Assembly (NCBI GenBank): GCA_964188305.1
Contig: OZ076885.1
Source of the DNA: Podarcis bocagei
Taxonomy: Eukaryota
DNA: 64,000 nucleotides
Direction: 5' to 3' (one strand)
The notes below the pieces were generated by a model. It saw only the letters and a program-made list of their open reading frames with translations. It had not been told where the DNA came from and did not search any database. Every line of letters starts with the position of its first letter. The first letter of the stretch is position 1. A program made the position numbers and the translations under genes. Positions 27,001 to 30,000 of this stretch are shown one piece after another.

Positions 27001-30000
27001 CAGAAACTGACACAGAACAGACTGATCTGCCTTTTCACAAAAGAGACAGGCCAAAACAGCATTCTTTCCCACCTCTTCTTGTGGGGCCCATACCTGTCAG
27101 AAGCAGCCTCTAAACCATCAGCTCCACTAAGTTGATCAGGCTTCAGCACTTACCGTATTTTTTGCACCATAACACTCACTTTTTTCCTCCTAAAAAGTAA
27201 GGGGAAATGTCTGTGCGTGTTATGGAGGGAATGCCTACGGGTGGCATGCCTACGGATTTTCCTCCTCTAAAAACTACATGCGTGTTATGGTCGGGTGCGT
27301 GTTATAGAGCGAAAAATACGGTACCTATTTTCCCAACTGTGTTGGTCTTGCCAAAGCCAGTGCTTTGATGGGGGAGAGTCCATTTCTGAAAGAGCTGCCT
27401 AAAGACAGCAGATTCAGAACCGTCATTTTCAGTCTCCACGCTGGTGCTGGGTGGGTAGTTCTTTGCCTTCATGTAACCCTGAGATGACAAAGAGAAGACC
27501 AGAACAGAGCAACTTTCACAACAAGGTGAGGAAGGACTCCACAGAGACTTCATTAAACAGCATATTTGGAAGTATCCTAGACTATCACCCTCAACAGGCC
27601 CAGTGTTATCTCTTTAACACCTGAGGCCTGCAACAAAAAATGATAAGTGTATTCCTCGCCTACTATAACAGCAGTGCTCATGTACATGGTGCCAGCCAGC
27701 CAGCCAGCAATGCCCCCGGTAGAACGCTCCATTCCATCCCTCTGCCACCAGTTTTCTTTTTCAACTAACACTCAGCATTCTGTGGTTACTGAGCATGCTT
27801 GGTCCTCATTGGTCAGGATGTGGTTTTTTTGTGGGGGGGAGTGTTGCCTCTTACATTTTGTTGGTTTTTAAAGCTCTATTTTGTTGTATGGTAGCTTCCT
27901 CTTGTTTCTCATTAGTCCTGTTGGCCCTCACCACCTGCTTTGGCTATTAGAGGGGCTAAAGATGGCTTTGGGTTCATCCAGGCTTTATGCTCTTACATTA
28001 ACTTAGGCTAAAAAGGAAACAATGTAGAACACAAACTAGCTTGAGCTCCAGTCTTTTGCACCCCTGATTTCTAGTGTAGCAGATGCAATGCGAGACAGAA
28101 TTGCTGCATTTTTAAATACTGTATATTCTTCAAACTGGAAAATGGAAGGTCTAAAAAAAAAAAAAAAGCATGAGTTTGCTTGTTGTTTTTTTTGCAAATG
28201 GTGTCCTGTTGAATAATATCCACCAAGAATTTACCGTAATTTATATGATTTATTGGGGCATTTGTCTGCATTGGTACAGTCATTTTTTTCTGTTGATGGA
28301 ACATTAAACAAAGGACTGGTGGAAGAATTCCTTCCCATAATTTGCTATCCACGATTTCACTTTGCTTCATTATAAGGACTGTGATTAAATTATTATTTTT
28401 TAAGCCTGTAAAGTTTTTTCTGTTTTATATACTTGTTTCCCTGATACCCTCCTTAAGCCTATGAAATGGATGAGACTAAAAGGAAGACAGGCAAGTAGGC
28501 AGAAGGTAATATCCAAGCCCTGGTCCAAAATCCAGACAGAGAATCTAAAAGAGTTGGTAGCATTCATATTAGTCAAGATCTGGAATCATGGAGCCAAAAA
28601 TGGCTTTGATCCCTTGAAATGGCAGAAGAGAGTGTGGAGGCACTTTGTTCCAGTATCTCCAAGAAGTTCTAGAACATTGCAAAAGGTCCTTGCCCAGATA
28701 TGAGACTGTATGGGCTCAGCTTTGCCTTATCCTCTCACTCACCAGGGCCCGTGTCATCGCTTGCCGCTTTTCCTCCTTGCTTGAATTCCTACCCTTCCAC
28801 ACAAAGATCTTCACACCACCTTGGTCCAATATGAAGCAGTCCTGAAAGGAGACAAAACAAGATCCAGTTGTTTCATTACAAAGAAGCTGTTTAGGCCAGT
28901 ATAGCCTTCTTCCATTACCAGGCTCTCTCTTACAGCATAGGTGGGTAGCCAGTAATCCTCTAGAAGTTGATGGACTCCAGCTCTCATCAACCTCAGCCAC
29001 CATGGTCAGTGGTCAGGGATGATGGGCATTGTGGTCCAGCAACATCTGGAAGGCCACAGTCTCACTAGGCAGAACGGCTACAACTGTGTTAGATGACATT
29101 GGAATAATGTCTCCTCTGGTCTTCCCTTCTCTCCAACCCCCAACCTACGCTTTAAGCTTGTCATGGTGCAACCAATCCCCCAGGGATGAGTCTTACCTCA
29201 TTCTTGAGAAGGTCCTGGGTGAGGGGCTGGATGGCAACTTCTTGGATAAGAAGGTTCCCTTCTATCTCAGAGACTCTGGGAGAGGAACAAGAGGGTAGTC
29301 ATGGGACCAGCTCTCCAAAGTGATGTTGCTAGTCTACACTCTGGGATGAAGATTATGCAAAACTATAATGGTCTTAAAAGCTAAAAATCAGGACTGGGCC
29401 TATTCAATATATAAAACCTTGCAGAATTCAGTTTTCTAGAGAACCTCACAGCCAGTTCAGTTAACATAAAAGTGGGGTGGAAAATAATGATAAATTACTC
29501 CTGCTTCTTTTTTTTCTGTACTTCTCCTATGATATCTGAAGCAGAACGTCTGCATCTCACCTGCAGTGACATCACTGAACCCCAAATTGCCTTGGCGCAT
29601 TCACACACTAATTTTAAAAAGGGGAGGAAGAGCCAGGAAACTAGGAGGATATTTTCTTACCTTCATGGTTACAAGGAAATATTTGAAAATGGGGGCAGTG
29701 TTGGCCAAAACAGCCCAAAAGCCAAGGTGCCCAACTGTAGGGTCTCCTTCCCTTTTGAGATTTATCTCTAGTTTATTTTCTTTCCTTCATAGTTCCAGGC
29801 TCCTGCCCTATTCCTGATCTCCCATTGTCCCCCCTCATACATCCCTTCTGGATGCCTTTTGCTGTCGCAGTTCTTTCCAAATCACTTTGAATCCACAAGA
29901 AAAAACCCAAACATGGCAAACAGAATTGTACTCATTAAGGAAGGTCACACAAGTGCTCTCAGGAGCAGTATTGATCCCATGAACAGAATAAATGGAACAT

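What the first reader, a model, noticed from the sequence alone, without database searches (positions are those of the whole stretch)
27147..27330. MITE inserted into a villin 5' splice site leaves a weak original donor and a strong 'poison' donor 171 nt away
Seen: on - the exon ends ...AAA ATA G|GTA, followed by a 169-bp TIR element and then TA-AGTG. Removing the element and one TA restores G|GTAAGT, so the TA target was positions +2/+3 of the donor. The in-place donor is now GTACCG. The far TIR end (..ACG|G plus TAAGT) rebuilds a consensus G|GTAAGT donor at 27154/27153. Using it adds 171 nt, in frame, but reads GTVFFAL-TAA (stop 27302-27304) about 148 nt before the new junction. Established: a stop more than 50-55 nt upstream of a junction triggers NMD, and N-terminal three-domain halves of gelsolin-family proteins sever actin. 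Inference: the insertion is a hypomorphic allele, a TE-created AS-NMD switch, or the source of a ~375-aa V1-V3 villin lacking the headpiece.
Basis: partly seen in the sequence, partly recalled or inferred. Interest (0 to 1): 0.85.

Follow-up and report, generated by a model that had tools for sequence, protein, structure and literature searches.

The report
Transposon splits villin splice donor
In a wall-lizard (Podarcis-type) genome a 169-bp miniature transposon has landed in the "TA" of the GTAAGT splice signal after villin-1 exon 9, leaving a crippled signal in place and a strong copy 171 bases on that would add an early stop; whether it harms the gene is untested.

Summary
Villin-1 lies on the minus strand (19 coding exons, 827 aa, intact). 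Coding exon 9 ends at G27325. A 169-bp element (27321-27153) follows, with 29-nt inverted ends and a TA duplication. Five lacertid orthologues (three Podarcis, Lacerta agilis, Zootoca vivipara) have the empty site AAAATAG|GTAAGTGCTG. So this is a lineage-specific insertion into +2/+3 of the donor.

The end motif recurs in 69 metagenome contigs. It is mostly TA-flanked, and one 1.9-kb copy encodes a pogo-type DDE transposase. The element is therefore a pogo-type (Tc1/mariner) MITE.

By my PWM and U1-duplex estimates:
- The ancestral donor was the gene's strongest.
- The in-place donor TAG|GTACCG is now the weakest of 18.
- The rebuilt ACG|GTAAGT at 27154 is near the top.

The inverted ends fold into a hairpin that covers both sites equally. 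Using the distal site adds 171 nt with TAA at 27304-27302, giving a predicted NMD target or a 375-aa G1-G3 fragment.

Against a long-standing knockout, the lineage's private coding changes are 4 synonymous and 0 nonsynonymous. The allele is therefore either young or leaky. No transcript data could be reached. The scan had not noted this before. It is a neat natural splicing case but not a new kind of system.

The parts
17897..37632 (-). Villin-1 (VIL1 orthologue) coding region: 19 coding exons, 2484 nt, 827 aa, no internal stop when spliced canonically
   Evidence: Spliced model built against P. muralis villin-1 X2 (P0203) gives 818/827 identical residues, with GT-AG at all 18 introns. Pfam on P0203 finds 6 Gelsolin repeats plus the VHP headpiece.
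27325..27478 (-). Coding exon 9 (154 nt; end of gelsolin repeat 3 and the G3-G4 linker). Skipping it would shift the frame.
27319..27327 (-). In-place 5' splice site TAG|GTACCG (positions -3..+6). Intron positions +4 to +6 are now the transposon's first bases.
   Evidence: PWM -1.17 and U1 duplex -5.6 kcal/mol, the weakest PWM score of the gene's 18 donors (U1 duplex energy third weakest). The orthologues have TAG|GTAAGT.
27322..27323 (-). Upstream copy of the duplicated TA target (donor positions +2/+3)
   Evidence: The empty sites carry a single TA.
27153..27321 (-). 169-bp non-coding TIR element (pogo-type Tc1/mariner MITE), sense-oriented in the pre-mRNA
27295..27321 (-). Left TIR, CCGTATTTTTCGCTCTATAACACGCAC. 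It contains the first in-frame stop.
27153..27179 (-). Right TIR (reverse complement CCGTATTTTTTGCACCATAACACTCAC). Its terminal CGG supplies positions -2, -1 and +1 of the rebuilt donor.
27151..27152 (-). Downstream copy of the TA target duplication. It forms +2/+3 of the rebuilt donor.
27148..27156 (-). Rebuilt distal 5' splice site ACG|GTAAGT (last exonic base 27154), 171 nt downstream and in frame
   Evidence: PWM 6.22 and U1 duplex -10.4 kcal/mol.
27174..27182 (-). Second transposon-borne candidate donor AAA|GTGAGT (last exonic base 27180; offset 145, out of frame)
   Evidence: PWM 4.94 and U1 duplex -7.6 kcal/mol.
27302..27304 (-). First in-frame stop (TAA) after read-through. It lies 148 nt upstream of the distal junction.
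27176..27178 (-). Second in-frame stop (TGA) inside the element
25699..25799 (-). Coding exon 10 (acceptor ...CCCAACAG|CCAAAGTAGAG). The canonical join gives [15 protein letters not shown].

Best explanation
A pogo-type (Tc1/mariner superfamily) miniature inverted-repeat element transposed into the TA at intron positions +2/+3 of the GTAAGT donor after villin-1 coding exon 9. This happened in one Podarcis-clade lineage, after it separated from P. muralis, P. raffonei and P. lilfordi.

Shown:
- The insertion, its TA duplication and its TIRs.
- Its absence from five relatives.
- The intact 827-aa villin reading frame.

The rebuilt donor is a mechanical by-product. The element's ends are ...CGG, and the target TA is duplicated. 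The downstream end therefore keeps G|GTAAGT, changed only at -3/-2. The upstream end keeps only G|GTA, followed by CCG.

Inferred:
- U1 snRNP should strongly prefer the distal site, or the element's internal GTGAGT.
- Much of the pre-mRNA from this allele should then carry 171 (or 145) extra nucleotides with a stop seven codons in.
- Such transcripts would be degraded by NMD, or would yield a 375-aa G1-G3 fragment.
- Functional villin can only come from residual use of the weak TAG|GTACCG site.

The allele is therefore most likely a partial loss-of-function (hypomorphic) splice allele. Because the coding sequence shows no relaxation of constraint, it is either evolutionarily young, possibly still polymorphic, or leaky enough to be tolerated. 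Villin-null mice are viable.
For: - Insertion and empty sites.
- Family: 69 metagenome contigs carry the TIR motif. Of 24 complete elements, 21 have TA at the independently tested right flank. One 1.87-kb element carries a 426-aa ORF with DDE_1, HTH_Tnp_Tc5 and a Brinker-type HTH.
- Donor strengths: ancestral 7.21 bits / -11.6 kcal/mol; in place -1.17 / -5.6; distal 6.22 / -10.4; internal 4.94 / -7.6.
- The deficit of the used donor against its best decoy within 250 nt is -7.4 bits. The next worst in this gene is about -1.9.
- The hairpin covers both sites equally (opening 7.15 and 7.16 kcal/mol), so the distal site keeps its roughly 4.8 kcal/mol advantage.
- A stop follows after GTVFFAL, 148 nt before the distal junction, with nine further junctions downstream.
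- Residues 1-368 hold three complete gelsolin repeats.
- Weakly U1-complementary 5' splice sites are especially sensitive to local structure (PMC2794156 abstract).
Against: - No RNA evidence of any kind was reachable.
- The PWM was typed from remembered human frequencies, and the U1 duplex energy is a crude proxy. MaxEntScan and SpliceAI were not available.
- The gene shows strong purifying selection on this lineage. There are 4 synonymous and 0 nonsynonymous private changes, where about 23 nonsynonymous would be expected if neutral at the private intronic divergence of 1.18%. This fits a harmless insertion as well as a young one.
- A conserved donor in the same gene, exon 5 AAG|GTGCAA, is about as weak by U1 pairing (-5.3 kcal/mol) and is evidently used in relatives. 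Weak donors can therefore work in this context.
- Only one copy of the element was seen in this genome's 64 kb.
Confidence: 0.55

Rival explanations
1. The insertion is real but effectively neutral. The weak in-place donor TAG|GTACCG is still used for nearly all transcripts, helped by exon definition, exonic enhancers, first-come co-transcriptional U1 binding, or the hairpin masking the decoys. The insertion may be fixed in the species without affecting villin.
For: - The CDS is intact with 0 nonsynonymous private changes.
- A comparably weak conserved donor works at exon 5.
- The right TIR arm, which carries both decoys, is base-paired in the predicted fold.
- The upstream site is transcribed about 170 nt before its competitor and before the hairpin can form (inference).
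Against: - The hairpin costs the in-place site just as much (7.15 against 7.16 kcal/mol), so it gives no relative advantage.
- The 7.4-bit, roughly 4.8 kcal/mol gap to a consensus GTAAGT only 171 nt away is far outside anything else in this gene.
- Established knowledge of 5' splice-site competition favours the site with stronger U1 pairing.
Confidence: 0.3
2. Co-opted function. The element acts as a selected switch between productive splicing (weak donor) and unproductive splicing (poison donor, AS-NMD). Alternatively it is the source of a functional 375-aa G1-G3 severing/capping villin without the headpiece.
For: - The truncated product would contain three complete gelsolin repeats.
- N-terminal halves of gelsolin-family proteins are stable folded units with solved structures, e.g. 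gelsolin G1-G3 1rgi_G and a 400-residue villin chain 9jw0_A.
- The hairpin offers a conceivable regulatory handle.
Against: - The element is absent from all five relatives, so there is no conservation to suggest selection.
- A stop 148 nt upstream of a junction, and upstream of nine more, predicts NMD rather than translation.
- No truncated lacertid villin exists among the public proteins searched (a weak negative).
Confidence: 0.06
3. The TIR hairpin loops the element out of the pre-mRNA. The single-stranded flanks AUAGG and AGUGCUG then sit side by side, and U1/U6 read a donor split across the base of the helix. This would restore near-normal use of the 27325 junction.
For: - The stem closes exactly at U27323-A27151, so the flanks supply positions -3..+1 and +4..+6 of the ancestral donor.
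- The arm duplex is -34.2 kcal/mol and the fold z-score is -3.9.
- It would reconcile a severe-looking lesion with an unrelaxed gene.
Against: - I know of no precedent for U1 or U6 pairing across a 170-nt structured insertion. Known bulged registers involve single nucleotides (own knowledge).
- Positions +2/+3 would have to be taken from the stem's terminal pairs.
- This is purely a geometric argument.
Confidence: 0.04
4. Assembly artefact, or a somatic or single-haplotype oddity that does not represent the germline of the species.
For: Only one assembly was seen, and no reads were available.
Against: - The difference has exact transposition hallmarks: a TA duplication and 29-nt TIRs matching an independently attested family.
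- Assembly errors do not produce these.
- The window has no N and the flanks are collinear with five relatives.
Confidence: 0.03

Closest known systems
Transposon-insertion splice alleles (for example Tc1 alleles in C. elegans, Ds/dSpm alleles in maize, disease-causing Alu/L1 insertions near splice sites). Cited from my own knowledge and the TE reviews listed.
   Same: A mobile element inserted in or next to a splice signal weakens the native site. It offers cryptic sites from its own ends, giving mis-spliced, often PTC-bearing, transcripts alongside some normal mRNA.
   Different: The element sits inside the donor hexamer itself. Because the TA target is duplicated and the TIR ends in G, the whole donor is copied to the far end of the element. 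The two donors are also the two feet of one hairpin. This is a natural allele in a wild-species genome, not an induced or clinical mutation.
Introners: transposon-derived introns that recruit a splice site from their target-site duplication (PMC9860276)
   Same: A TIR/TSD DNA element whose TSD together with its terminal bases forms a functional-looking splice site.
   Different: Introners insert into exons and create a new intron that is removed cleanly. Here the element entered an existing intron's donor. It creates no new intron and carries no 3' splice site at its end. It lengthens the exon with a stop if its donor is used.
[D1,2] stwintrons of fungi: an internal intron splitting the donor of an outer intron (PMC12403724 abstract)
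   Same: A donor hexamer is interrupted by an inserted sequence.
   Different: A stwintron's internal intron has its own GT...AG, and its removal rebuilds the outer donor. Here the only 171-nt removal frame that starts with GT ends in CG, not AG. Two-step splicing therefore cannot rebuild the donor.
Unproductive splicing coupled to NMD through poison exons or alternative 5' splice sites (own knowledge)
   Same: An alternative donor adds sequence with a PTC more than 50-55 nt upstream of a junction.
   Different: Known regulated cases are conserved, often ultraconserved, and autoregulatory. This element is lineage-specific and absent from five relatives.
Structure-attenuated 5' splice sites (MLV 5'ss stem-loop, PMC2794156; SMN2 exon 7 TSL2, PMC1802598)
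   Same: A local stem overlaps a donor with limited U1 complementarity.
   Different: One stem, made by the transposon's own inverted ends, overlaps two competing donors symmetrically.
N-terminal halves of gelsolin-family proteins (gelsolin G1-G3, e.g. PDB 1rgi_G, 3ffk_A; villin 400-residue chain 9jw0_A; villin '44T' proteolytic half, the last from my own knowledge)
   Same: The predicted 375-aa product ends just after gelsolin repeat 3, in the G3-G4 linker.
   Different: It would arise from an NMD-prone transcript with seven foreign residues (GTVFFAL). Its existence is unshown.

Membership tests
Tc1/mariner-superfamily (pogo-type) MITE | Terminal inverted repeats | tested here: met
   Arms 27295-27323 and 27151-27179 are 29 nt and 86% complementary.
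Tc1/mariner-superfamily (pogo-type) MITE | TA target-site duplication, shown against an empty site | tested here: met
   Five orthologous loci have a single TA in AAAATAG|GTAAGTG, while the window has TA-element-TA. Of 24 complete family members in metagenome contigs, 21 have TA at the independently scored right flank.
Tc1/mariner-superfamily (pogo-type) MITE | Small size and no coding capacity | tested here: met
   The element is 169 bp. In the read-through frame it carries stops at 27304-27302 and 27178-27176.
Tc1/mariner-superfamily (pogo-type) MITE | TIRs shared with an autonomous element that encodes the matching transposase | tested here: met
   L038 carries a 1.87-kb TA-flanked element with the same TIR motif and a 426-aa ORF. 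That ORF hits DDE_1 (6e-31), HTH_Tnp_Tc5 (6e-12) and BrkDBD (1e-9). Caveat: that copy comes from a metagenome contig of unknown host, not from a lizard.
Tc1/mariner-superfamily (pogo-type) MITE | Many copies in the same genome | tested here: inconclusive
   There is one copy in the 64-kb window and none in the five ~25-kb orthologous loci. No lizard genome could be scanned with these tools.
Villin-1 (VIL1 orthologue) | Six gelsolin repeats plus a C-terminal villin headpiece, and orthology to annotated villin-1 | tested here: met
   The window's conceptual 827-aa product is 818/827 identical to P. muralis villin-1 X2, which has 6 Gelsolin repeats plus VHP in Pfam. Exon order is collinear with five lacertid villin-1 loci.
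NMD substrate (50-55-nt rule) | A stop codon more than 50-55 nt upstream of an exon-exon junction | tested here: met
   For the distal-donor isoform, the TAA at 27304-27302 lies 148 nt before the 27154 junction, and nine more junctions follow. This is in silico only.
NMD substrate (50-55-nt rule) | The transcript exists and is stabilised when NMD is blocked | not testable with these tools
   No RNA data were available. Protein-database searches for read-through or truncated products were blank.
Introner (TE-derived intron) | Insertion creates a new, cleanly spliced intron in previously exonic sequence | tested here: not met
   The element lies in a pre-existing intron shared by all relatives. 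Its downstream end is ACG|GTAAGT, and there is no 3' splice site at the element boundary.
Stwintron-like nested intron | An internal GT...AG intron whose removal rebuilds the outer donor | tested here: not met
   The only removal frame that restores G|GTAAGT and begins with GT is 27324-27154, and it ends in CG.
Regulated poison-exon / AS-NMD switch | Conservation of the poison element across related species | tested here: not met
   The element is absent from P. muralis, P. raffonei, P. lilfordi, L. agilis and Z. vivipara.

The most novel reading that the evidence does not exclude
The insertion is fixed and tolerated because the transposon's own TIR hairpin governs the outcome. It could loop the element out so the split donor halves are read together. 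Alternatively it could gate access to the weak productive donor and the strong poison donor, making villin output depend on RNA folding, helicases or transcription speed. That would be a natural, structure-controlled 5' splice-site switch made in one step by a MITE.
Probability: 0.07. Interest if true: 0.8.

Novelty: new member of a known kind. Interest (0 to 1): 0.42.

Why it matters
This is a clean, datable natural experiment in 5' splice-site choice. One transposition turned the best donor of a conserved gene into its worst. It placed a near-consensus copy 171 nt away and tied the two together in a 29-bp stem.

If the allele is fixed and villin is still made, it would show how much sequence damage a vertebrate donor can absorb, and what part RNA structure plays in that. 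If it is a segregating hypomorph, it is a ready-made natural villin knock-down in a wild lizard.

It also shows that any TA-targeting element ending in ...GG will copy a GTA-type donor when it hits one. This is the same logic by which introners recruit splice sites from target duplications.

Tried and rejected
1. MaxEntScan and SpliceAI were not installed. I used a PWM typed from remembered human frequencies and ViennaRNA U1 duplex energies instead. Treat the absolute values as rough.
2. A search for other copies of the element in the window and in five orthologous loci found none. Copy number in this genome is therefore unknown.
3. A protein-database search with the 83-aa genomic ORF ending in GTVFFAL returned only bird, turtle and other orthologous intron read-throughs. 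Nothing came from this species.
4. A search with villin residues 1-375 for truncated lacertid products found none. Both blanks are uninformative about splicing.
5. The window's own annotated protein was not identifiable in the 90% cluster of lacertid villins. A spliced protein cannot be passed by reference, so no exact look-up was made.
6. Rfam finds nothing in 26500-27500.
7. A literature search for the TIR sequence returned nothing, so the family has no name that I could attach.
8. CpG content as a clock: the element has o/e 1.07 against 0.23 for the window. The expected CpG loss over the whole private branch is small, so this does not date the insertion.
9. Stwintron-like or recursive resolution is rejected, because there is no AG at the element's end.
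10. A-to-I editing of both in-frame stops, which lie in the stem arms, would give a 57-aa linker insertion. I considered this and set it aside as needing three efficient edits.
11. Earlier notes of this scan on mariner MITEs elsewhere in the genome did not concern this family.
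Full report
WHAT IS THERE

On the minus strand the exon ends ...GGGAAAATAG at 27325 and is followed by GTACCGTATTTTTCGC.... A 169-bp element runs from 27321 to 27153. Its arms, 27295-27323 and 27151-27179, are 29 nt long and 86% complementary. TA lies on both sides, at 27323-27322 and 27152-27151. The far end reads ...AAAATACG|GTAAGTGCTG.

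Reading on from the exon gives GTVFFAL and then TAA at 27304-27302. A second stop, TGA, lies at 27178-27176. The extension to 27154 is 171 nt and in frame. The first stop lies 148 nt before that junction. The next acceptor is ...CCCAACAG|CCAAAGTAGAG at 25799.

THE GENE

The exon peptide matches the end of gelsolin repeat 3 and the G3-G4 linker. Whole-protein hits are villin-1, and the best are the lacertid lizards.

I built a spliced model against Podarcis muralis villin-1 X2. It gives 19 coding exons (37632-17897), 2484 nt and 827 aa, with no internal stop. It shares 818 of 827 residues with P. muralis, and all 18 introns are GT-AG. The element sits at the donor of coding exon 9 (27478-27325). 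The canonical join gives [14 protein letters not shown], exactly as in every lacertid villin-1 retrieved.

THE INSERTION IS PROVEN BY EMPTY SITES

I fetched the villin-1 loci of P. muralis, Lacerta agilis, Zootoca vivipara, P. raffonei and P. lilfordi. In all five, the flanks align without the element, and the site reads AAAATAG|GTAAGTGCTGAAG.

The window therefore carries a 171-bp gain: 169 bp of element plus one duplicated TA. The target was the TA at +2/+3 of a GTAAGT donor.

Over 6 kb the window differs by 3.5-4.1% from each of the three Podarcis species. That is the same distance as they show from one another. The window falls inside the Podarcis clade with 100/100 support, though its position within the clade is unresolved. 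The insertion is therefore specific to a fourth lineage of that clade.

WHAT THE ELEMENT IS

Only one copy lies in the window. The TIR motif TACCGTATTTTNCGNNCTATAANNCGCA, however, occurs in 69 metagenome contigs, apparently from contaminating animal host DNA.

Twenty-four of these hold a complete element of 181-1863 bp with the inverted end ...AAAATACGG. The pattern did not constrain the right flank, and that flank is TA in 21 of the 24. Some are the same insertion seen in several samples.

One 1.87-kb element (L038) encodes a 426-aa protein with DDE_1, the Tc5 HTH and a Brinker/psq-type HTH. That is a pogo-type transposase of the Tc1/mariner superfamily. The termini align well.

The label 'MITE' is therefore justified by structure, target and family. 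Its copy number in this genome remains untested.

WHY A DONOR IS REBUILT

The family's ends are TA|CCG...CGG|TA. When the element is inserted into G|G-TA-AGT, the downstream junction becomes ...ACG|G-TA-AGT. All six intron positions and -1G are kept, and only -3/-2 change. The upstream junction becomes TAG|G-TA-CCG, which loses +4 to +6. This follows mechanically from the TA duplication plus a terminal GG.

DONOR STRENGTH

These figures come from a PWM typed from remembered human 5'ss frequencies and from ViennaRNA duplex energies with the U1 5' end. Both are approximations.

| Site | PWM (bits) | U1 duplex (kcal/mol) | Note |
|---|---|---|---|
| Ancestral TAG|GTAAGT | 7.21 | -11.6 | Highest PWM score in the gene (exon 1's GAG|GTGAGT pairs more strongly with U1, -12.7) |
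| In place TAG|GTACCG | -1.17 | -5.6 | Lowest PWM score of the 18 donors (exons 3 and 5 have weaker U1 pairing) |
| Distal ACG|GTAAGT | 6.22 | -10.4 | |
| Internal AAA|GTGAGT (27180) | 4.94 | -7.6 | In the right TIR |

The used donor falls 7.4 bits below its best decoy within 250 nt. The next worst case in this gene is about 1.9 bits. Exon 5's donor AAG|GTGCAA is conserved and about as weak by U1 pairing (-5.3). It has no strong competitor nearby.

STRUCTURE

The pre-mRNA around the element folds with the TIRs paired (MFE -60.7 kcal/mol, z -3.9). The arm duplex alone is -34.2 kcal/mol. The stem closes at U27323-A27151. It therefore covers +2 onward of the upstream donor and -26 to +3 of the distal one.

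The cost of opening the nine donor positions is 7.15 kcal/mol upstream and 7.16 kcal/mol distal. For the empty-site allele of P. muralis it is 3.1. Both sites are handicapped equally, so the distal site keeps its advantage. Published work shows that donors with limited U1 complementarity are the ones attenuated by local structure (PMC2794156; SMN2 TSL2, PMC1802598).

CONSEQUENCES OF EACH PATH

- Distal or internal donor: a stop seven codons in, upstream of ten junctions. NMD is predicted. If the transcript is translated, the product is 375 aa holding three complete gelsolin repeats.
- Exon 9 skipping: 154 nt are lost, which shifts the frame.
- Intron retention: the same stop is read.
- Two-step removal of the element: impossible, because the only GT-starting 171-nt frame ends in CG.

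Full-length villin therefore requires direct use of TAG|GTACCG.

CONSTRAINT AND AGE

Changes private to the window lineage in the CDS are 4 synonymous and 0 nonsynonymous. Private intronic divergence is 1.18%. Neutral drift over the whole branch would therefore give about 23 nonsynonymous changes, of which about 13 would fall in exons 10-19.

A null allele can thus have existed for at most roughly the last 13% of the branch, or roughly 24% if only the downstream exons are considered. Otherwise the allele is not null. The element's CpG o/e of 1.07, against 0.23 for the window, fits a young insertion but is not decisive.

PUBLIC ISOFORM EVIDENCE

There is none. No ORF ending in GTVFFAL and no truncated lacertid villin appear in the protein collection. 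These are blanks, not negatives.

COMPARISON WITH KNOWN SYSTEMS

The case belongs with transposon-insertion splice alleles. It shares the splice-site-from-TSD logic of introners (PMC9860276). It is not an introner, because no new intron is created. It superficially resembles a [D1,2] stwintron (PMC12403724) but fails the defining test. It is not a conserved poison-exon switch.

[quoted passage not shown] A hypomorphic allele could therefore persist for some time.

VERDICT

The functional interpretation is plausible, but it is unproven and is bounded by the lack of any relaxation in the gene.

My estimates are as follows:

| Reading | Estimate |
|---|---|
| Young or leaky hypomorphic splice allele | about 55% |
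| Effectively neutral | about 30% |
| Co-opted function, hairpin-bridged donor or artefact | the remainder |

This is a new, unusually tidy member of a known kind, and an attractive minigene and RNA-seq target. It is not a new class of system.

Noticed in passing
window 26640-26881 (-), TA at 26883-26882 and 26639-26638: A second, unrelated MITE lies in the same intron. It is 242 bp with CAGTGGTACCTCAGG... TIRs and a TA duplication. It is present at the same site in P. raffonei but absent from P. muralis, P. lilfordi, L. agilis and Z. vivipara. This sharing disagrees with the 6-kb tree, which pairs P. muralis with P. raffonei. Possible causes are incomplete lineage sorting, introgression or excision. 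A related copy (81% identical) lies at L001:1-253.
   Followed up: partly
window 40611-43661 (+): An uninterrupted 1016-aa ORF with an APE-type endonuclease and a reverse transcriptase (Pfam Exo_endo_phos, RVT_1). It looks like an intact LINE ORF2. It lies between the upstream alternative first exon of villin-1 and coding exon 1.
   Followed up: partly
window 44478-44648 (-): This stretch matches the N-terminal extension of the RefSeq villin-1 X1/X2 isoforms of lacertids (88% identical to Zootoca). In the window the position of their start codon reads FFRS* rather than MFTKQ. The 54-79-aa extensions may therefore be translated 5' UTR rather than real protein.
   Followed up: no
window 31066-31077 (-), donor of coding exon 5: The weak donor AAG|GTGCAA (PWM -0.13, U1 -5.3 kcal/mol) is conserved in all six lacertids. 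It is a useful internal control for how weak a working donor can be in this gene.
   Followed up: partly
L006-L074 (metagenome contigs), e.g. L038:2869-4735: The TIR motif TACCGTATTTT(C/T)CGG.CTATAA..CGCA marks a family of TA-flanked elements (181 bp to 1.9 kb) in many metagenome contigs, apparently from host-associated samples. One copy has an apparently intact pogo-type transposase. A full-text search for the sequence found no paper.
   Followed up: partly
P0231, P0232 (UniRef villin-1 entries of 410-421 aa from panda and owl monkey): Public databases hold N-terminal-half villin-1 models in mammals. Whether they are real short isoforms or partial transcripts was not examined.
   Followed up: no
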